Of a stretch of 64,000 bases of DNA, positions 3,833 to 51,567 are shown piece by piece (the first letter of the stretch is position 1; the number at the start of each line of letters is the position of its first letter). The stretch comes from Octopus sinensis (lineage: Eukaryota): the NCBI RefSeq assembly GCF_006345805.1, contig NW_021833742.1, forward strand, positions 103,424 through 167,423, read 5' to 3'. The position numbers and the translations under genes are program-made. The notes below the pieces were generated by a model, which saw nothing but the letters and a program-made list of their open reading frames with translations, had not been told where the DNA came from and searched no databases.

Positions 3833-4316
3833 GGTACTTTTGTCGAAGTGGTCGCAGTTTTTTTAGAAGATAATTAAAATTAATTAATTTTTTTATAAAT
3901 TCTGAAAAAATAACGGTACTTTTGTCGAAGTGGTCGCAGTTTTTTTAGAAGATAATTAAAAATAATTAATTTTTTTTAGTTGAAAAATAGATTATTTAAT
4001 TATAACCCTCTATCAATAATTTAAATGGTTATTAAAATTATTTAAAAATTTATTTAACCAATTTAGTCATTTTAGTACGCGGCATCCAAATTCCAGACTG
4101 TAGAAGGAATTTATTTGAAAGGATATCCATTTTGCAGAAAATGCACTGCATCCTCCTTACTTATTGGGAGCTGTCGGAATATAAATTAGTAAAAAATTTA
4201 ATAATATTTAAATTATTGATAGAGCGACTTAAATAAACTATAATATATTCCACCTCAAAAATTATTAGATTTTTTAAAAGGCCTAAAAAAACTGCGACCA
4301 CTTCGACAAAAGTACC
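3833..4316. mobile_element. MITE with 34-bp TIRs and 8-bp TSD (Merlin-like)
   Basis: TIR ggtacttttgtcgaagtggtcgcagtttttttag at 3833, with its reverse complement ending at 4316. TSD taattact at 3825-3832 and 4317-4324. The left end is tandemly duplicated at 3915. Confidence 0.85.
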
Positions 4317-20709: not shown

Positions 20710-21615
20710 CTATCTATTATGAACTGGCTCGCAGGATTGAAAGACAATTCCCGCGTAAAACAGCCAGCGAGATCCTCTGAATGAGGAATATAAATTCCCT
20801 CGGATCTCTGGAGCGGTGGGTGCACAAGCGGCCAAGTTTCTTGAGATGGGCAAGCGTCTTGGCCCAAAAACACAGGAGGTTTCGACAGCAATTGCCCAAA
20901 AGCAAAATCGATCGAGTAAGTCAACATATTTCGATAGTTTTGAAAATTCGGCCTTCTCGGCCGACAAGCCGGGACGACAAGCCGTAGCATTTAAGGCACC
21001 CTTGGCGAAGGAGTCGGAACAGGTGACGTCCCAAACGAGCTGTTTCCCGGATTCAAAAGCGAACAGCGTACAGCCGTCCGGACGTTTTGCATCATCAAGA
21101 ACAAGGCCCGTCGGTTCCAGAATACAAGGGAAACCAGCTCTTTCCAGAGCTTTCTGAATTAGACTGTTGATTTCGGTGTGCCGAGGAAATCGGCCGGCGC
21201 TCATTCGACAAGACAGAGGATGTAGACCAAAGGCGTCAACTTTATCCCCACAACGACATGGGTGAGGTCTGCAGACAGGGAGTCCAAGGCGATTACAGAT
21301 ACCCAGACGGAGTGAATCCCTATCGAGGACAGTATCCAAAAGCGGAAAAGGGAGAACATTCAGCCAGGAGCCTGAGTATGGCTGACAGACGGATCGGAAA
21401 CAAGCCAGTCTGTGTTGGTCGAGGAGTGGTTCCATGTCAGTAGAAGAACGACGGCAGAGAATTTTGTCCCAGTCTCGCTGAGAAGAGACATCGGAAGGGA
21501 CCTCAGAGAAAGGGAAGGGATTTATTTTTGATTTAAAGATCAGGTACTCAAAGTGATTACTTCTTTCTGATACCCTAGACAAGTCATATGGCAGACACAG
21601 TCTCTTTTCGCTCAA
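20710..21615 (-). mobile_element. CRE-like non-LTR retrotransposon, 3' portion
   Basis: SGSWLNVLP, CRCGDKVDAFGLHPLSC..GRFPRHTEIN, EPTGL..DAKRPDG, WDVTC.D, KY..L and AVETS (zinc knuckle plus RLE). One frameshift near the end. Confidence 0.9.
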
Positions 21616-21629
21616 GCACGAAAATGAAG

Positions 21630-21910
21630 TGTTTGATTCCCCAACTCGGCGTTTGCTTTGTCATTGCTTGATTCTGTTTCAACGAGAGACGACAATGCTT
21701 TTTAATGTTTTCTCTATGAATGTACGAAAACGTCCTTCACTAATGTTCAACAACTTGAAGTATCCCAAAAAGTTTGAAGTAATAAAACCATCCCATTTAG
21801 ATACATTATGTGCTTACTTTTGCTGATAGTTCATCTCTAATTCTTTAGAAAGGAGATCATATTTCTTTTACTTTTCAACCTCCACCTGGTGGAGATTTTG
21901 AGATTTTTCT
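21630..21910 (-). mobile_element. R4-like RLE remnant
   Basis: QVEVEK*KKYDLLSKEL...WDGFIT...IEKTLKSIV. Confidence 0.65.
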
Positions 21911-22729: not shown

Positions 22730-22925
22730 GGTCGTCGACCCAGGCTTCGCTTCTAATCGCGCTGAAGATGAAAATCCGGAATTACGGTCACCTCTCTAGT
22801 CTTATTTTTACGCCCATCGCCGTTGAGACCTCTGGGGTTTTTGGGTCCAAGTCGCTTTGTTTCTCCAAGTCGCTCCGGCGGCACGAGAGGGGGTGCAGAC
22901 CTTTCGCGTTCACCATATCACAACA
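22730..22925 (-). mobile_element. CRE-like remnant
   Basis: DMVNAKGLHPLSCRRS...GLNGDGRK. Confidence 0.65.
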
Positions 22926-22934
22926 CATGCGTTG

Positions 22935-24590
22935 ATTTTAACATCAAACAAATTTACGGAAAGGCCAATAATTTTCGGGCTCAAAGAATTGTCAAAAATT
23001 TAGTCAAATTTATAATCAGGAAGTTGTTAAAAATGATGGAAAATAGTGATAAAAAGTGGAGTGATAAATTAGAAAATGCTGTGTACAGTTATAACACATC
23101 TGTCCATTCATCTTCTAACAAAAGTTCCTCCGAAAGATATCAAGGAATAAAGAAAATGAATTCAATAATCCATGGTTATACATATATCACATAAAAAAGA
23201 AACTAATTAACTAATTAATTTTACTAACTAAGTCCAGAGCCTTTGAAGTGAGCAGAAGGTGGCACTCCACGCATCTCCTCCCCTTCCTCCTCCTCTTCTC
23301 TGGCACTGTAGACCTTCGAGAAGGTGCAGTCCAGCGCCTCTCGCTGACTAAACGTCAGGAAAGGGTTGGATCGGCGAGCATCAAACGAGACACTTTCCAG
23401 AGTCCGCTTAAGAACAGTTGACTGTATATAAGCCTGTAGAGACTTATCTACATCCAACTGTCTTAAGTACCGCTTGTGGTATTTGGTGACCAGTCCATCC
23501 CATGTCATCACACACGGGATGACATGGACTTTGCACTGGTGCATAAGTCCTAGCTCGTTTGCAAGGAGGTCATACTTCCTCCTTTTCTCCACTTCCACTA
23601 TCTGCAAACGGTCTAGGCACGTGATGCCCACCTCCACGATAACAATCTCCCCGGTGACCTTATCGTGGACCACAATGTCGGGTCTGTTGTGCTGGACAAC
23701 AATCGAGGTGCGTATGGGGGTATCCACCTTAATGCACACCCGCGAGTTCTCACACACCGATTGAACTCGATGGGTTCGCAACTTTCTGGACCACCTCAAG
23801 CCATACTTATTGCAGAGCAAAAGATGGAAGGACCTCACCACCTCGTTATGCCTCCATGTGTAATCATGGTAAAGCATACTCCCGCACTTCGTGGCTAAAT
23901 GGTCAACGGTCATTGCCTTACTCTTACAGTGGTTACACTGTTTCCGTTGACCATTAAAAAAGTTTCTATCCTGCAAATATGAGAACAACCCTTCTGATTG
24001 GGGAGAGTTATTCCCATATTTCAGCCACGTAGATGACGACGATACGTCAATGTGCGGGTTGTCCAGGCTGCTAAATAGAGTCTTGTGAAGGACTTTTAAG
24101 TTGATCTTTTTAATTAAAGACTCCTTGGAACAAATGGAAGATTTTGTTAATTGTTCGACTCCAGAATCTATTGAAAAATTATTTAATTCGATTTAAACTC
24201 TATATCTAGATTATTCCCAGTCAGACAATTTGTTTCTAACTGCAAGGAGATTCAATTTCAAAATTAACCTAATTGATAAAAATTCAAGTTATTACAAAGC
24301 TATAAACAGGAGAATGAATGTTCATAATAGTAAGTATATTTTTAGCATGAGAATAAAGCACCAGTTACAAACATTAATAAATAAGTTCGGGTTAAAAAGG
24401 ACTTTGGAACAAATCCTTCATTGCGACTGGATAAGTTTGAGTCTTCGTATTATTCTGCTGCAGAAATAATTAATATTTTATCGAATAATCGCGTTGAGGT
24501 AGTTTTAAATATTTTATTTAATAGATAAAAAATTCGAAAGGAGAAATATCTACTGTGCTAATGACTAGACTAAAAAAATAGTTAGCTGAA
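22935..24590 (+). mobile_element. Decayed Ginger-type integrase, split by an R4-like insertion
   Basis: 5' part: IKQIYGKANN..AQRIV..WSDKLENAVYSYNTSVHSS..ERYQGI. 3' part: SSYYKAINRRMNVHNSKY..KKDFGTNPSLRLDKFE..LSNNRVE|IKNSKGEI..TRLKK. Both are homologous to the element at 27011. Confidence 0.7.
23195..24135 (-). mobile_element. R4-like non-LTR retrotransposon, 3' portion with open RLE domain
   Basis: ORF 23224-23988: CNHCKSKAMTVDHLATKC, HNEVVR, HNRPDIVVHDK, VEVGIT and EKRRKYDLL (CCHC plus PD-(D/E)xK). T-rich 3' end. Confidence 0.9.
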
Positions 24591-26755: not shown

Positions 26756-27010
26756 AAACATAAATTTGCTGTAAAATATTTTTTTAATACCTTTCTATTA
26801 TTGCTTTTGATTTTTAATAATCGTTAATTCGAATAATACAGTCTAGGTAATAAATCAATAGTGAATTAAGTTTTAAAAATTTAATAAACGGATTTGATGT
26901 TTGTTTCAAAAAATAATCAAAAATACAAAAAATCATTATAGAAACCTTATTGTAAAGCGGGCTTTTGCATACAGGCCAATATGTTAAAAACTTTTTTTAA
27001 CGTTCTATTA

Positions 27011-28616
27011 TGTCGCGAGCCGAGCGCGCGACCGAGCACTAGACGCGACCAATCAAATTTACTCAATGTCAATCAATGTCAAAATAACTTATTTTATTGA
27101 TTAGATCAAGGACAATTATTATTTCTGACTGTTATAACTTCTTAAGTCGTTTGGCATGAACTTTCATTACTGATCCATCACTATTTTCCACATTGACAAA
27201 ATTGTTAGACAATTTCGCAACAATAGTGAATGGATCCCCGTATGGATGTTCAAACCTGGTTAATCTCAAGGAAGGATTTGTCCCATAATCTTTTTGAATG
27301 CGAACCTTTTAAGTAATTATAAAATAAATACAATGTCTCCAATGTTTAATTCATATTTAGACACATGCACTCCCATCTTCCTGTTCATTCTCTTATAATA
27401 TGGAGAATCCAAGTTAACTTTTGGGAAGTTGAATTCGAATTCATCTTTAGTTGAATTTAAAACATTTACTGTTAATTTCGGGAGTGTATTGAAGTTCAGC
27501 TGCCTCAACATCAGTATTTCCTAAAACAGTATTGAATCCAGGAATTCCACGATATCTCTCAAAGGGGCTAACGCCTGCAAAAAATTTAAGACAAATAATT
27601 CACCTGTAGATGAATGAGGTGTTTGATTGTACAAAAACACAGTCTTTCTTATGTGTTTTACCCACTCTTTGGTGTCATCCAAACTCATAATTTTTGAAAG
27701 GCTCCTTGTGACCGTCTGATTAAATCGTTCAACAATTCCCTGACTCTGGGGATTGTTTGGTCTTCCATGTATTTGTCGAACACAAAACTCTTCACATACT
27801 TTTGTCACATGAGAATTTTTGAATTCTGTTCCGTTGTCTGATTGGAGAAACTTGCAGGGACCAAAATCCATAAAAATATCATTCAGATTATTCGCCACCT
27901 CTACTCCACTTTTATTTTTAAGATTCCTTGTAAACGCATATTTCGAATATACGTCTATTACAGACATTAACCAAGAAAAATCATTGTTTTCATTTTTAAA
28001 TCTACAAAATAAGTTAATTTTATACCGTTTAAGATCAATTAAATCTACTTGAAATCTTTCATTAGGTAAATCAGCAACAATATGAGTTGAATCATCATAT
28101 TGTTTTAGTGGAACTGAAAATTTGCAAATATTGCATTCTTTAACAACTTGGCGAATGATCTCTCTTCTCAATATAAAAAATCTTTGCCTACATAAGGCTT
28201 CCAAAGCATTATGTCCGCAATGATTAGCTTCATGAATCTCACGTGCAATTAATTTCATCTCTTCTAAGCTCGTGGAAGCAATTACGAGCTTGTGTAGGCC
28301 GTTTACATCTTTAAGATATAGTTTCCCCTCTTTAATTAGGAAATTTTCTGCTTTCTTTTTGAGTCGATACTTCTTATGTTTGGAAAGATCGACCTCCTCA
28401 TTATTGAGTATAGATCTTAGGAAATTATATTCATCTTGATCTTTTACAAACAAACGCTGGCCCGACATAACAAAGTGTAGACAAAATTATGCTAGCGTGG
28501 ATAATATTTTATCTGGGTGAGTATGGTACGCCGGCAATTAGACTGACAGGTGGATGACAGGTATGACAGGTGTCAAAGTCGCGTCTAGCGCTCGGTCGCG
28601 CGCTCGGCTCGCGACA
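27011..28616 (-). mobile_element. Ginger-type (Ginger2/TDD-like) DNA transposon, apparently intact
   Basis: TGT...ACA ends, 39-bp GC-rich TIRs with one mismatch, and 5-bp TSD tatta (27006-27010, 28617-28621). Confidence 0.93.
27132..28468 (-). CDS. Gypsy-like integrase transposase, 410 aa, 5 exons
   Basis: HHCC (HEANH..CNIC), DD35E (QVDLID, QSDNG, IVERFN) and a GPY/F-like PYGDPFTI. Introns at 28002-28025, 27575-27603, 27445-27469 and 27306-27331 give a 1233-nt stop-free CDS. Confidence 0.9.
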
Positions 28617-28832
28617 TATTATTTGCTAATGTTCGGCCTGTCTCTCTTAATATCAGCAGATGATTACTGAATTACAGTATCCCTTAGAAGATAATTGAAT
28701 AAAATAGTAAACCCAAATGGAAGAATGGTGGATCCAGTAATGAAGAATTTTGTAATTAATTTGTTGACTCATGTGATGAAAATTTGAAAATCTCAATACT
28801 GGATATACTTAACCAAACCATTTATTAACTAA

Positions 28833-38959: not shown

Positions 38960-39280
38960 ATCAAATGTGTGGACTCTCTCTCGCCTCAGAACCTGCTGAT
39001 GTCCGCATCCGCCTCTGGATCTATTGCCACAACCGCGGAATGCAAAAAGATGCGGAAGTACTCCTCACTTATGGAAAAGTTCCAATTCCTCCCATTCGCA
39101 GTTGAGACTTCCGGTTCCTTGGGCGGTAAGGCAATCAGCTTCGTTTAGAAGATCGGGTCCCGCATGTCTGCTCACACAGGCGACGCCCGCGAATCAAGAT
39201 GGTTTTTCGAGCGGATATCCCTCGCAATAGTACGGTCTAATTCTTTCTCGATCGCGTCGGCTTCCCGTCCATGAAGTTTA
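38960..39280 (+). mobile_element. CRE-like 3' fragment
   Basis: AECKKMRKYSSL..FLPFAVETSGSLG..FERISLAIVRSNSFSI*. Confidence 0.8.
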
Positions 39281-39388: not shown

Positions 39389-40860
39389 ATGCCTTTATTG
39401 TATGAAAATTAAATTTTTAATCTATAAGAACAATTCCATCTATTGAAGAAATCAAATCAAATGCAATATTAGAGTTTTCTAAAAAATTTAAAACTCTCCC
39501 GAAAATAGTATCAGTTGCTCCAGGCAGAGTAAATTTGATTGGTGGACACATTGACTATAATGACGGTTTTGTTCTACCAATTGTATTCATATTTTACAAA
39601 CTATAGGCAATTTCTCTTGCTACTGTTATCGTTGGCTCACATTCTCACAACGGATCCAGTTCAATTACGACATTATCACCAGATATTAGCGAACCACATT
39701 TTGTTACATGTTCTGATCTATCTCAATGGTTTTCTCCTGGATATCCAAAATGGACAAATTATATTAAAGGAGTTCTTGTGAACTTTAAAGGTTTTTATGT
39801 ATATTATCAATGCATTTTATTTTTTAAAATTAAAAATATTTTTGATCACTTGTTATTATTTTTTATAATTCTAAAACGCATTTTTTCCGAGAAAAAGCAT
39901 ATTTTGTAATTTAGATTTTGCACGACCTTTTAACCTTGTCGTGGCTACTTCTATTCCAATTGGAGGCGGATTATCTAGCTCTGCTGCCCTTGAAGTCGCT
40001 TCATACCTGTTCTTTGAGCAACTCTTTTTAAATTCCACTAAAGAACCATCCTTGCTGTCCAAAGCACTTGTTTGTCAAAAAGCAGAACATAATTTCGCGG
40101 GAACTCCTTGTGGGATCATGGATCAACTTGTATCTTTTTGTGGAAAAGAAAATCACGCAGTTTTTATAGATTGCCAGTATGATTTAGTAGAGCCATTATT
40201 TAGATCTTGTGAATATAATCTAGCATCATTTCCCCAGAAAGATATAAGTATATTAGTCATAAATTCAAATGTCAAACACGAATTAGCTACTTCAGAATAT
40301 TCTTTCAGATTATCTCAATGTAAACAAGTTCTTTCAATTCTTAATATATCATCGTTTCGTGATTTCGAGTTACATCATTTTGATAGTTTGAATTTTTATT
40401 AAACATAGTGTTAAATGATTATCCTGATTTGAAAAAAAGAGCAAAACATGTAGTAAGCGAGATTGAAAGATCTAAAAAAGCTTTTGAATCGTTAAAAAAT
40501 GGCGAAATATATGAATTGGGAGAATTGATATGCAATAGTCATATCTCACTCAAGTTGTTATGGATAAATACTTTCTACTTTATATAGAAACGATTATGAA
40601 GTGTCTTGTGAAGAATTGGACTCTTTACAAGAAATACTCAGTTCAGCTGAAGGCGTTTATGGCTCTAGAATGACTGGAGGGGGATTTGGGGGTTCACTTG
40701 TAGCAATTGTCAATACTCAAGTAGTAGACACTGTTGTGGAAAGTATTGATGTATATATCTGTATATTTATTGACGTTAGAAATTTTACAAAGGTATTGCG
40801 ACTATAATGTCAGTTTCTCCCTCTGCTGGAGCTCATTCTTACACTCCTGTCGATATGTAG
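39389..40860 (+). CDS. GALK1: Galactokinase (GHMP kinase)
   Basis: [42 protein letters not shown] and [12 protein letters not shown]. Confidence 0.95.
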
Positions 40861-41004: not shown

Positions 41005-42085
41005 ATTGGCAATACGATGTCCTCGACTTACATGATGAGGTCCTTAAAACCTTCCCCCCAAAAAAAATTAAAAAAAATTTTTCTGCGTTTTGGTCAAAAT
41101 GAACAACTACGATGTCCTCGACTTACATGATGAGGTCCTTAAAACCTTCCCCCCCAAAAAAATTAAAAAAAATTTTCTGCATTTTGGTTAAAATGAACAA
41201 CTACAATGTCCTCGACTTACATGATGAAGTCCTTAAAACCTTCCCCCCCAAAAAAATTAAAAAAAAATTTTCTGCATTTTGGTTAAAATGAACAACTACA
41301 ATGTCCTCGACTTACATGATGAAGTCCTTAAAACCTTCCCCCCAAAAAAATTAAAAAAAATTTTCTCTGCATTTTGGTTAAAATGAACAACTACAATGTC
41401 CTCGACTTACATGATGAAGTCCTTAAAACCTTCCCCCCCAAAAAAATTAAAAAAAATTTTCTGCATTTTGGTTAGAATGAACAACTACAATGTCCTCGAC
41501 TTACATGATGAAGTCCTTAAAACCTTCCCCCCAAAAAAAATTAAAAAAAATTTTCTCTGCATTTTGGTAAAATGAACAACTACAATGTCCTCGACTTACA
41601 TGATGAAGTCCTTAAAACCTTCCCCCCCAAAAAAAATTAAAAAAAAATTTTCTGCATTTTGGTTAAAATGAACACACTACAATGTCCTCGACTTACATGA
41701 TGAAGTCCTTAAAACCTTCCCCCCAAAAAAATTAAAAAAAAATTTTCTGCATTTTGGTTAAAATGAACAACTACAATGTCCTCGACTTACATGATGAAGT
41801 CCTTAAAACCTTCCCCCCAAAAAAATTAAAAAAAAATTTTCTGCATTTTGGTTAAAATGAACAACTACAATGTCCTCAACTTACATGATGAAGTCCTTAA
41901 AACCTTCCCCCCCAAAAAAAATTAAAAAAAAATTTTCTGCATTTTGGTTAAAATGAACAACTACAATGTCCTCGACTTACATGATGAAGTCCTTAAAACC
42001 TTTCCCCCAAAAATCAAAAAATTATTTTCTGCATTTTGATTAAAATGAACAACGCGAATGTCCTCGACATTCATGATGAGGTCCA
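41005..42085. repeat. Tandem array, ~94-95 bp x ~12
   Basis: Unit aacaactacaatgtcctcgacttacatgatgaagtccttaaaaccttcccccc...ctgcattttggttaaaatg. Twelve tgtcctc cores counted. Variation is mostly in homopolymer length. Confidence 0.95.
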
Positions 42086-42305
42086 TTAAACCTTCAAGGC
42101 AAAAATCTCACGTATTAAGAATATCCTTGATGAAAACGACAGCGAGAATATTAACAATGATGAACTCCCAATTATTCGCGATAAAGAAATTGAATTCATC
42201 CTATGTTTTTCTCTTTAAAATTAAATGCATATATCATTATCGACCATGAATCAAAATTAAAGCTATTATCATATTTGACTTTGACAGAATGTGCAATCAC
42301 AGATT

Positions 42306-42510
42306 GCACGACTTTGAATAGAGTGTGCAATTAACAGATTTTGAAAAACCACTTTGATAGTTGAAACCACATTAGCACAATCATTAACACAATTTACCAC
42401 CAATTGACGCACGACCTTGAATAGAGTGTGCAATTAACAGATTTTGAAAAACACTTTGATAGTTGAAACCACATTAGCACAACCATTAACACAATTTACC
42501 ACCAATTGAC
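42306..42510. repeat. Tandem duplication, ~103 bp x2
   Basis: gcacgac(t/c)ttgaatagagtgtgcaattaacag...ccaattgac starts at 42306 and at 42409. Confidence 0.85.
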
Positions 42511-46139: not shown

Positions 46140-47134
46140 TCAGCTACTAGCCGCAGAGAGAATAGAGAAACTGTTCCCCCTAAGTACGGCTATTGAGACG
46201 CGCTCAAAAAGCCGATTGACCTCGCGGGGGTCGTTTCTAATCTTCCCGAGGTGACGGCCTCTCTCGGTGAGAAAACGTAGCGTGGCTGGGCCGAATGTGC
46301 CTGATGTTTCGACTGAAACGGGCACAAAGAGGAATCTGTCGGCGAGCGAGGCGTACTTGTCTTTCTTCCGGGTCTCTGCCCTCCTCGCCGCTGTGCCAGC
46401 TTCGATCGCGGACGCGAGAAGGCATGTTGACGCAAAAGTGTCAGAGCATGTCGCGTCCCAGACGATCGCTTTGCCGCACTTGAACGGGAAGAGCGAGACG
46501 CCGTCCGGCCTCTTGCCATCGCCCCTGTTAAGGCCAGAGGGCTCCAGCTGGCACGGGATGCCGGTTGCCTCGAGCAGACGCTTTATTATGGAATTAAGCT
46601 GTCCGTGCCTGGGGAACCTCCCAGGGCATTTGCGGCAGGAGAGCGGGTGTAGACCTTTGCGGTCTATATGAGCCCCGCAACGGCATTGGTGAGGCTGGCA
46701 AATGTCCAAGCCGAGTCGGAGAGATATTCCGATTCTTAAACAGTCTGGGTCCAGGAAGGTTCCAGCTGCAGGGGAAGGATAGGCGTTGATCCAGGCGCCA
46801 GTCCGTGGAGATGCTCCAGACAACAGACAAGCACGCCGTTGTTGGTCTCCGTGAGACAGTAAGTACCGGAAAGACTGAGAGCTGCTGCTGACTCCGTCCA
46901 CTCGCGCATAAGGCATAGGTCAACGGGAGTTTTTAGTCCGCAATCTGTCCACAACGATGTGCCGTATGAAAGCTCTGAGTCCGTGAGCGATCCAGAGGGA
47001 GGAGGAAGGATCTGGACTACGAGAGGCATGCATCGGTGAGAGGAAGAAAGAAAGCATGGCAAGGAGAGGACCGAGGGGGCTTGGAATCCGAGACCCCCGT
47101 GCCTGATAGGCAGGATAGCCTGTTTCCAGCCCAT
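46140..47134 (-). mobile_element. CRE-like retrotransposon, 3' portion
   Basis: LPIRHGGLG, TGAWINAYP, CRCG..GLHPLSC..GRFPRHGQLN, DGKRPDG, WDATCSDT, KY and VSVETSG. One frameshift. Confidence 0.9.
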
Positions 47135-51003: not shown

Positions 51004-51567
51004 TATTATTATTATTAGCACTTCCCGTAGGAACATAAACAAGGAAAGGAAAGAGTTATATTCCCACACGTGCCACACACGATACAATCTTCTTAACCAT
51101 CGTTTGCCATCCTCTGCGGTTTTGTGCAAGCCATCGCAGTTCGTCTAAGTCCTCGCATTTTTTCAAGGTTTTGCCAACGTGTTTCAGATCGTGTTCCAGC
51201 GCAACCGGCAGTGTTGTGCGGGGACGTCCGCGAAACTTTGGGCTATCCGAGAGAAAGTACTCTTCCATGGCCTGGTAAGCAGGTGAGGACGGGTCCATTC
51301 TCAGGACGTGTCCGAAGAGCCTCCAGCGGCCATCTATGATGTCCTGGCTGACTGGCACCGAGTTACTGAGTTTGTAGAGCGATGAGTTGTTAATTTTCTT
51401 AGGCCAATGCAGACCATTTAGGACGCGAAGCTGTTTTCTGTGAAACGAGTCAAGATTCTTTAGTTCGGTGTCAGAGATGCCCGGTTTGACAAAAGCGTAT
51501 TGGTTGAGGTGGCGACGTACCTCTCTTGCACAATGTCTAAAACACACACAGTACAACCGGACAGACT
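51004..51567 (-). mobile_element. 5'-truncated RTE-like LINE with (TAA)n tail and 11-bp TSD
   Basis: TSD atttgccaaat at 50993-51003 and 51568-51578. The empty site is at ~59463-59473. ORF 51056-51556 has RWRLFGHVLRM and RGRPRTT. Confidence 0.9.

What the first reader, a model, noticed from the sequence alone, without database searches (positions are those of the whole stretch)
27011..28616. Apparently active Ginger-type DNA transposon whose integrase gene has four host-sized micro-introns
Seen: TIRs with 1 mismatch in 39 bp, a perfect 5-bp TSD, and a 410-aa HHCC/DD35E/GPY-F-like integrase that is stop-free only after removing introns of 24, 29, 25 and 26 nt. The 24-nt intron is in-frame and stopless, so it is invisible in the ORF track, and its removal restores the DLIDLKRFKNENNDFSWL spacing. 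Established: Ginger elements use Gypsy-like integrases and can have introns. Inference: the element is adapted to, and dependent on, the host micro-intron spliceosome. That would limit its host range and allow regulation by splicing, as with the P element; retaining intron 2 or 3 gives a truncated core, a possible repressor.
Basis: partly seen in the sequence, partly recalled or inferred. Interest (0 to 1): 0.75.

Follow-up and report, generated by a model that had tools for sequence, protein, structure and literature searches.

The report
Compact integrase transposon with four micro-introns
This is an intact-looking 1.6-kb "cut-and-paste" DNA transposon of the Ginger (retrovirus-type integrase) kind, in the genome of an animal with ultra-short introns; its transposase gene carries four such 24-29-nt introns that its relatives in other hosts lack, which is a tidy but not revolutionary case of a mobile element taking on its host's gene architecture.

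Summary
Window 27011-28616 is a 1,606-bp element with 39-nt GC-rich inverted ends (1 mismatch), TGTCG...CGACA tips and a perfect 5-bp duplication (TATTA). On the minus strand it encodes a 410-aa H2C2 + DD35E integrase. The frame stays open only after four GT-AG segments of 24, 29, 25 and 26 nt are removed.

After removal, the protein lines up without gaps at the junctions with intronless full-length relatives. A galactokinase gene in the same window has introns of 23-34 nt (plus one of 124), so "host-sized" is correct.

The host is a divergent animal that uses the standard code. It is probably a myxobolid myxozoan or a dicyemid.

The element belongs to a large, poorly annotated clade of 1.5-1.8-kb elements. 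Named members are microsporidian "Gag-Pol" proteins. The clade shares TGTCGCG tips and 5-bp AT-rich duplications, which is most like Ginger2/TDD; that placement is not proven.

A dead second copy, 3-5 kb away, shares one intron position, lacks another and has an extra one. This points to intron turnover within this host.

Current activity, dependence on host splicing and P-element-like regulation are untested inferences. I rate it a new member of a known kind, of moderate interest.

The parts
27006..27010 (.). Left target-site duplication, TATTA
   Evidence: Read directly from the sequence. It is identical to 28617-28621.
27011..27049 (+). Left terminal inverted repeat, 39 nt, GC-rich, starting TGTCGCG (TGTNR-type tip)
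   Evidence: The same TGTCGCG tip is present in the relatives L001 and L004.
27050..27131 (-). 3' untranslated / subterminal region with a TCAATGTCAA x2 repeat
   Evidence: TGTCA repeats also lie inside the other end; a role as binding sites is inferred only.
27132..27305 (-). Exon 5, including the TAA stop at 27134-27132. Encodes the C-terminal small beta-barrel domain (VRIQKDYGTNPSLRL...KRLKKL).
   Evidence: The AlphaFold model of relative P0001 shows a beta-barrel at the homologous region.
27306..27331 (-). Intron 4, 26 nt, GTATTT...AAAAG, phase 0
   Evidence: A 26-nt interruption sits at the same position in the dead copy B.
27332..27444 (-). Exon 4
27445..27469 (-). Intron 3, 25 nt, GTAAAT...TAAAG, phase 1. 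A 19-nt alternative donor at 27463 also keeps the frame.
   Evidence: The relative L007 is uninterrupted here.
27470..27574 (-). Exon 3 (SPFERYRGIPGFNTV... and the variable linker)
27575..27603 (-). Intron 2, 29 nt, GTGAAT...TGCAG, phase 1
   Evidence: It is absent at the same site in copy B and in L007.
27604..28001 (-). Exon 2: most of the catalytic core (D164, D203, E239)
28002..28025 (-). Intron 1, 24 nt, GTATAA...TGTAG, phase 2, in-frame and without a stop. If retained it adds YKINLFCR.
   Evidence: The Pfam rve score improves when it is removed (vs 79).
28026..28468 (-). Exon 1: N-terminal extension, H2C2 zinc finger (H79, H83, C112, C115) and first catalytic Asp (D142)
28469..28577 (-). 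5' untranslated / subterminal region with three GACAGGT repeats (TGTCA on the inward-reading strand)
   Evidence: any function is inferred only.
28578..28616 (-). Right terminal inverted repeat, 39 nt
28617..28621 (.). Right target-site duplication, TATTA
22920..23170 (+). Dead relative (copy B), catalytic-core end. The catalytic Glu is replaced (IVKNL), and there is no interruption at the intron-2 site.
24250..24580 (+). Copy B, C-terminal part. It has a 26-nt interruption (24357-24382, splice dinucleotides lost) at the intron-4 site. It also has an extra 26-nt GT..AG intron at 24498-24523. It is split from the core by a LINE-like insertion at 23.2-24.2 kb.

Best explanation
The region is an autonomous-looking cut-and-paste DNA transposon of the Ginger superfamily, whose members encode transposases related to retroviral/Gypsy integrases. 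Its features are closest to the Ginger2/TDD group. It has inserted at a TATTA site in the genome of a divergent animal with ultra-short introns.

Its single gene encodes a four-part integrase: an N-terminal extension, an H2C2 zinc finger, a DD35E catalytic core and a small C-terminal beta-barrel. By analogy with retroviral integrases, this protein would bind the TGTCG...CGACA ends, cut the element out and join it into a new target with a 5-bp stagger.

The gene yields the full 410-aa enzyme only after the host spliceosome removes four GT-AG introns of 24-29 nt. Relatives in other hosts have no introns at these sites. A second, dead copy nearby has a partly different intron set. The introns were therefore most likely gained, and turned over, while the family lived in this micro-intron lineage.

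Shown: the anatomy, the homology, the intron positions and their match to host intron size.
Inferred: that the introns are spliced, that the enzyme works, and that the element can still move.
For: Anatomy:
- TIRs, tips and duplication.
- Spliced 410-aa reading frame.
- rve, rve_3 and Integrase_H2C2 above their cut-offs.
- Sequence matches to MMTV, HIV and Ty3 integrases.
- The model of relative P0001 shows N-terminal extension, zinc finger, core and C-terminal barrel. Its best structural matches are PFV and Ty3 integrases.

Homology:
- Full-length relatives at 37-47% identity are single uninterrupted ORFs on 1.5-2.9-kb contigs.
- All residues invariant in that alignment are present in the window protein.
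- TGTCGCG tips and 5-bp AT-rich duplications recur in independent relatives. TATTA occurs in Dictyocoela muelleri L001 and TTTTA in L004.

Introns and host:
- The host galactokinase gene has seven GT-AG introns of 29, 24, 124, 27, 23, 34 and 29 nt. Its spliced product matches human GALK1 end to end.
- Across the window, ORF-joining AT-rich GT..AG segments peak at 25-34 nt.
- Copy B shares the intron-4 position, lacks intron 2 and has an extra intron.
- The closest relative, L007 (54% identity), is uninterrupted at intron sites 1-3.

Literature:
- Definitions of Ginger1 and Ginger2/TDD: PMC2836005.
- Among the 51 animal genomes compared there, median intron lengths below 30 bp were found only in myxobolid myxozoans and Dicyema: PMC13644364.
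Against: - No transcript data, so splicing is not observed.
- Only one intact copy is visible. The TIR pattern is absent from JGI metagenome contigs, and the host genome could not be searched. Copy number, polymorphism and activity are therefore unknown.
- In a rough neighbour-joining tree the family forms its own clade. It does not nest inside the KRBA2-like (Ginger2-derived) group. No Repbase Ginger1, Ginger2 or TDD reference sequences were available.
- The C-terminal domain resembles a GPY/F module by eye. Ginger2 is said to lack that module, so assignment to a subgroup is uncertain.
Confidence: 0.85

Rival explanations
1. Splicing-regulated transposon. Stage- or tissue-specific retention of intron 2, 3 or 4 would yield truncated integrases that repress transposition, as with the P element.
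For: Retention gives proteins of 307, 322 or 357 aa. These keep the zinc finger and catalytic core but lose the C-terminal domain. Very short introns are inefficiently spliced in microsporidia, according to PMC13644364.
Against: There are no expression data of any kind. Frame-breaking introns with premature stops are the normal state of introns in any gene, so truncation on retention is not evidence of regulation. Such transcripts would usually be degraded rather than translated.
Confidence: 0.12
2. Domesticated or fixed single-copy integrase gene that is no longer mobile.
For: Only one intact copy is seen in 64 kb. Ginger-derived host genes are known (GIN1/2, KRBA2, SCAND3, Imagin; PMC2836005, PMC3575427, PMC12863088).
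Against: Both TIRs are retained almost perfectly and the 5-bp duplication is intact. Domesticated genes normally lose both. The element sits in a repeat-rich, gene-poor stretch next to a decayed relative.
Confidence: 0.07
3. Decaying pseudogene. The four interruptions would be frameshifting insertions, not introns.
For: No transcripts were examined. The neighbouring copy B and the relative L007 do carry true frameshifts and lost catalytic residues.
Against: All four segments begin with GT and end with AG. All lie within the host intron size range and are much more AT-rich than the exons. Their exact removal restores frame and colinearity with relatives. There is no other stop or frameshift in 1,233 coding bases.
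Confidence: 0.04
4. Fragment of an LTR retrotransposon pol gene, as the NCBI name 'Gag-Pol polyprotein' on the microsporidian relatives suggests.
For: Integrase domains are shared with Gypsy/Ty3 and retroviruses.
Against: The ends are inverted, not direct, repeats. The whole element is 1.6 kb, with no reverse transcriptase, RNase H, protease or gag. Relatives are likewise 1.5-1.8-kb TIR-bounded units.
Confidence: 0.02

Closest known systems
[quoted passage not shown]
   Same: - TIR-bounded cut-and-paste elements with TGTNR tips.
- A single H2C2 + DDE integrase-like transposase.
- AT-rich targets and a 5-bp duplication, as in TDD-4/5.
- No OTU/Ulp1 domain and no YPYY motif.
- KRBA2-like proteins (Ginger2-derived, PMC3575427) are the best named hits outside the element's own clade, at E about 1e-25.
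   Different: - Much smaller: 1.6 kb against about 2.8-3.8 kb for the listed examples.
- 39-nt GC-rich TIRs.
- The C-terminal domain looks like a GPY/F module by eye.
- The rough tree puts it in a separate clade.
- It carries four micro-introns.
Microsporidian 'Gag-Pol polyprotein' elements (Dictyocoela roeselum, D. muelleri, Nosema granulosis) and many unnamed 1.5-2.9-kb contigs in public assemblies
   Same: - Same clade, at 37-47% identity over the full length (54% over the fragment P0011).
- Same domain order.
- Same TGTCGCG tips and 5-bp AT-rich duplications, including the identical TATTA in D. muelleri.
   Different: - Those genes are uninterrupted single ORFs, while the window element has four introns.
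- TIR length varies (213 nt in D. muelleri).
- The hosts are fungi-related parasites, not an animal.
Ginger1 DNA transposons (Hydra and others)
   Same: - Integrase-type transposase, TGTNR tips and TIRs.
- Some carry 1-4 GT-AG introns (PMC2836005).
   Different: Ginger1 makes 4-bp CCGG/CCGT duplications. It carries a C-terminal OTU or Ulp1 protease domain and a YPYY motif. None of these is present here.
Drosophila P element (splicing-controlled transposase; from general knowledge)
   Same: A DNA transposon whose transposase needs intron removal. Intron retention would give a shorter protein.
   Different: The transposase family is unrelated. For the P element, tissue-specific retention and repressor function are demonstrated. 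Here nothing about expression is known.

Membership tests
Ginger superfamily (integrase-encoding cut-and-paste DNA transposons) | Terminal inverted repeats (not LTRs) flanked by a short target-site duplication | tested here: met
   39-nt TIRs with 1 mismatch, and 5-bp TATTA on both sides.
Ginger superfamily (integrase-encoding cut-and-paste DNA transposons) | Termini follow the TGTNR ... CA pattern of Gypsy LTRs | tested here: met
   TGTCG...CGACA. The same tips occur in relatives L001 and L004.
Ginger superfamily (integrase-encoding cut-and-paste DNA transposons) | A single transposase with H2C2 zinc finger and DDE (DD35E) integrase core; no RT, RNase H or gag | tested here: met
   Pfam rve, rve_3 and Integrase_H2C2 hits; no other domain. 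The only long ORF in the element is the integrase. PDB matches are to retroviral and Ty3 integrases.
Ginger2/TDD group | 4-bp (metazoan) or 5-bp (TDD-4/5) duplication at an AT-rich target | tested here: met
   TATTA here, TATTA in L001 and TTTTA in L004.
Ginger2/TDD group | Lacks the YPYY and GPY/F motifs | tested here: inconclusive
   No YPYY was seen upstream of the zinc finger. The C-terminus reads ...RFEHPYGDPFTIV..., a GPY/F-like layout by eye. It has no significant similarity to chromoviral GPY/F modules and no Pfam hit, and most relatives lack the G-P.
Ginger2/TDD group | Groups phylogenetically with Ginger2, TDD, KRBA2 and SCAND3 integrases | tested here: inconclusive
   KRBA2-like proteins are the best named outside hits. 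However, a rough NJ tree of the core domain places the family as its own clade. No Repbase reference sequences were available.
Ginger1 group | 4-bp CCGG or CCGT target-site duplication | tested here: not met
   The duplication is 5 bp, TATTA.
Ginger1 group | C-terminal OTU or Ulp1 protease domain | tested here: not met
   The protein ends after the small C-terminal domain at residue 410. There is no such Pfam hit even at E up to 1.
LTR retrotransposon (Gypsy/Ty3), as the relatives are named in NCBI | Direct long terminal repeats, with gag, protease, RT and RNase H | tested here: not met
   The ends are inverted, the element is 1.6 kb and only an integrase is encoded.
Host-type spliceosomal micro-introns | GT-AG boundaries and a length within the host's intron size range | tested here: met
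   All four are GT...AG, at 24, 29, 25 and 26 nt. The host galactokinase introns are 23-34 nt plus one of 124. The window-wide peak is at 25-34 nt.
Host-type spliceosomal micro-introns | Removal restores the frame and colinearity with intronless homologues | tested here: met
Host-type spliceosomal micro-introns | Spliced transcripts exist | not testable with these tools
   No transcriptome of the host is reachable.
Currently active transposon | Several near-identical copies, insertion polymorphism or observed excision | not testable with these tools
   The window holds one intact copy and one dead relative. The TIR is not found in JGI metagenome contigs. The host assembly is not searchable.
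P-element-like splicing regulation | Stage-specific intron retention producing a repressor protein | not testable with these tools
   Only the predicted truncated products could be computed.

The most novel reading that the evidence does not exclude
A transposon family that is intronless in its many relatives elsewhere has gained at least five different ultra-short introns since entering an animal lineage with 22-30-nt introns. Copies differ in which introns they carry. If so, these elements would be a natural record of recent de novo intron gain and of the minimal signals needed for micro-intron splicing. They would also be confined to micro-intron hosts.
Probability: 0.45. Interest if true: 0.55.

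Novelty: new member of a known kind. Interest (0 to 1): 0.4.

Why it matters
The element shows a mobile element taking on one of the most extreme gene architectures known in animals. Relatives without introns are available for comparison, so the four insertions can be dated and studied as intron gains.

It also gives features to a large clade of compact integrase transposons: TGTCGCG tips and 5-bp AT-rich duplications. Databases currently label members of this clade 'Gag-Pol polyprotein' or 'InsO transposase'.

If the introns are spliced, the element is a simple test object for how 24-29-nt introns are recognised. The element also cannot make full-length transposase in hosts that cannot splice such introns, which bears on horizontal transfer among parasites.

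None of this changes what is known about how Ginger elements work.

Tried and rejected
- Ciliate hypothesis (Paramecium-like code, TAA/TAG = Gln). Rejected: the integrase and galactokinase exons contain no in-frame TAA/TAG, the gene ends at TAA, and galactokinase is animal-type.
- Host identification by exact-protein look-up of three window ORFs. Nothing is on record.
- The first galactokinase homology search, using a single exon, returned only short fragments and was uninformative.
- Rfam and tRNA scans of the window found nothing.
- The TIR search in JGI metagenome contigs found no match.
- Other TGTCGCG sites in the window have no further TIR similarity, so there are no additional copies or MITEs.
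- The unfiltered window-wide scan for ORF-joining GT..AG segments was too noisy, because of overlapping ORFs in GC-rich LINE fragments. It gave a peak only after restricting to AT-rich segments.
The closest relative, P0001, was modelled instead.
- Cluster names for ten top family representatives were uninformative: 'InsO family' or none.

Full report

Yes. The region 27011-28616 is bounded by 39-nt inverted repeats that differ at one base. A 27-nt terminal pattern occurs only at these two positions in the 64-kb window, and none is expected by chance. The tips read TGTCG...CGACA. Immediately outside them TATTA is repeated directly, at 27006-27010 and 28617-28621. A 5-bp match at fixed positions has a chance of about 0.002 at this base composition.

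The longest plain ORF is 315 aa on the minus strand. Removing four GT...AG segments gives one open frame from ATG 28468 to TAA 27134-27132, encoding 410 aa. The segments are:
- 24 nt, 28025-28002
- 29 nt, 27603-27575
- 25 nt, 27469-27445
- 26 nt, 27331-27306

The segments are 12-24% GC against 35% for the coding sequence.

**2. Are the four segments introns?**

All the sequence evidence says so. No transcript evidence was available.

The spliced protein aligns over its full length with relatives at 37-47% identity that are single uninterrupted ORFs. At junctions 1, 2 and 4 the alignment is gapless:
- DLIDLKR|FKNENN
- HSSTG|VSPFERY
- NIGDI|VRIQKDYG

Junction 3 lies in a variable linker. Its removal is still needed to reach the conserved YYKRM...VH.SKY block. 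The closest relative is a 54%-identical fragment from a JGI metagenome. It is uninterrupted at sites 1, 2 and 3. The Pfam integrase-core score rises when the in-frame 24-nt segment is removed (43.4 to 46.8 bits).

One caveat: a 19-nt alternative donor for intron 3 also keeps the frame.

**3. Are they host-sized?**

Yes. A galactokinase gene in the same window (39389-40858, plus strand) needs seven GT-AG introns of 29, 24, 124, 27, 23, 34 and 29 nt. Its spliced 393-aa product aligns end to end with human galactokinase (E 1.7e-96). One of these host introns (27 nt) is also in-frame and stop-free, so that property is not peculiar to the transposon.

Across the window, AT-rich GT..AG segments that join two open frames peak at 25-34 nt. 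Control dinucleotide pairs do not show this peak, except the one-base-offset TG-GA pair, which has a smaller peak in the same bin. An unfiltered version of that scan was too noisy to use.

**4. What is the host?**

- The genetic code is standard. There are no in-frame TAA/TAG codons in the integrase or galactokinase exons, and the gene stops at TAA.
- Galactokinase is animal-type. It is only 44-48% identical to sequences from many phyla, with no close relative.
- A 2026 comparison of 51 animal genomes found introns this short only in myxobolid myxozoans and Dicyema japonicum (PMC13644364).
- The window is 31.5% G+C. Henneguya salminicola is reported at 29.1% with a 27-bp median intron (PMC13644364). 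D. japonicum is reported at 36.7% (PMC6736024).

I therefore infer a myxobolid-like host. This was not confirmed. Exact-protein look-ups of three window ORFs found nothing on record.

**5. What is the element?**

The protein has an H2C2 zinc finger (H79, H83, C112, C115) and a catalytic core with D142, D203 and E239. Exactly 35 residues lie between the last two. rve, rve_3 and Integrase_H2C2 score above Pfam's cut-offs. It matches MMTV, HIV and Ty3 integrases by sequence.

The spliced protein itself could not be submitted for modelling. A model of the closest full-length relative shows four parts:
- an N-terminal extension
- a zinc-finger helical domain
- an RNase-H-like core
- a disordered linker followed by a small C-terminal beta-barrel

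Its best structural matches are prototype foamy virus and Ty3 integrases. The element contains no reverse transcriptase, RNase H, protease or gag, and its ends are inverted. It is therefore a DNA transposon, not a retrotransposon fragment.

**6. The family**

A profile of ten relatives finds 1,171 representative proteins at E <= 1e-30. Many are full-length proteins of about 400-470 aa on contigs of 1.5-2.9 kb. Named members are 'Gag-Pol polyprotein' of the microsporidia Dictyocoela roeselum, D. muelleri and Nosema granulosis.

- In D. muelleri the element is 1,796 bp with 213-nt TIRs. It begins TGTCGCGCG and is flanked by TATTA, the same duplication sequence as here.
- A JGI metagenome copy ends ...CGCGACA and is flanked by TTTTA.
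- Logan contigs of 1,606 and 1,653 bp end inside GC-rich TIRs.

The family traits are thus TGTCGCG tips, GC-rich TIRs and 5-bp AT-rich duplications.

**7. Which Ginger group?**

By the published definitions (PMC2836005), the TGTNR tips, the H2C2 + DDE transposase, the AT-rich target and the 5-bp duplication match Ginger2/TDD. Ginger1 is excluded by the CCGG/CCGT 4-bp duplication rule and by the missing OTU/Ulp1 domain.

KRBA2-like proteins derive from Ginger2 (PMC3575427). They are the best named hits outside the family (E about 1e-25). However, a rough neighbour-joining tree places the family as a separate clade, and I had no Repbase references. Subgroup membership is therefore inconclusive.

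It has no statistical support, and most relatives lack it.

**8. A second copy and intron turnover**

A dead relative, copy B, lies on the plus strand at 22920-23170 and 24250-24580. It is split by a GC-rich LINE-like insertion and has lost the catalytic Glu.

- Its C-terminus is 72% identical to the D. roeselum protein over 40 residues.
- It has a 26-nt interruption at exactly the intron-4 position. The flanking exon sequence is conserved, the interior is not, and the GT/AG dinucleotides are lost.
- It has no interruption at the intron-2 site.
- It has an extra 26-nt GT..AG intron. Removing that intron restores the LSNNR...KK ending at the length seen in relatives.

Together with the intronless relatives, this indicates that introns were gained, and possibly lost, while the family resided in this host lineage. 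This step is an inference.

**9. Mechanism and what remains open**

By homology with retroviral-type integrases, the enzyme should bind the TIR tips, process and cut the ends, and insert them with a 5-bp stagger. Subterminal TGTCA repeats inside both ends may add binding sites; that role is a guess.

Retaining an intron has these predicted effects:
- Intron 1 adds eight residues within the catalytic core, six residues after D142.
- Introns 2, 3 and 4 give proteins of 307, 322 and 357 aa without the C-terminal domain.

Whether such forms exist or act as repressors is unknown. Whether the element is active is also unknown. The intact frame, conserved residues, near-perfect TIRs and perfect duplication are compatible with recent mobility. 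However, only one intact copy is visible, and the TIR was not found in JGI metagenome contigs.

**10. Verdict**

The structural interpretation is supported, and the regulatory and host-range ideas are untested. This is a new member of a known kind of element, in an unusual host. Its useful side-result is evidence for intron gain in a transposon. Interest is moderate (0.4).

Noticed in passing
window 22920-23170 and 24250-24580 (+): A second, dead member of the same integrase-transposon family. It is split by a LINE-like insertion, has lost the catalytic Glu, and has a partly different intron set from the intact copy.
   Followed up: yes
window 39389-40858 (+): An animal-type galactokinase gene with seven GT-AG introns of 29, 24, 124, 27, 23, 34 and 29 nt. 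The spliced 393-aa product aligns end to end with human GALK1.
   Followed up: yes
window 20713-21660 (-), 23227-24192 (-), 46143-46919 (-), 51059-51565 (-), about 38980-39230 (+): GC-rich (37-43%) ORF fragments with motifs typical of the C-terminal parts of non-LTR retrotransposon proteins. Two of them are 48% identical to each other. They stand out from the roughly 30% G+C background, so the window is repeat-rich and gene-poor.
   Followed up: partly
window 41013-42095 and 42306-42510: A 95-bp satellite with 11.4 copies at 94% match lies just downstream of the galactokinase gene. It is followed by a 102-bp unit repeated twice.
   Followed up: no
L003:4001-4963 (ENA ERZ25039529 contig_57512): A 320-aa member of this eukaryote-type integrase family (44% identical). 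It sits among GcrA, FUR, TsaD-family and NifU-type genes on a compact AT-rich contig that looks alphaproteobacterial. This could be a transfer into an endosymbiont or a misassembly. No TIRs were found around it.
   Followed up: partly
window 27070-27090 and 28537-28570: Short direct repeats containing TGTCA, read inward from each end, lie just inside both TIRs. They echo the TGTCG tip and are candidate extra transposase-binding sites.
   Followed up: no
L001:2288-2292 / 4089-4093 and window 27006-27010 / 28617-28621: The Dictyocoela muelleri relative and the window element are flanked by the same 5-bp duplication, TATTA. A metagenome relative (L004) has TTTTA. This suggests a family-wide preference for T/A-rich pentamers.
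   Followed up: partly
L007:1-1112 (JGI 3300026616): The closest relative (54% identity; contig 27% G+C) has two single-base frameshifts but no interruption at intron sites 1-3 of the window element. Its organism is unknown.
   Followed up: partly
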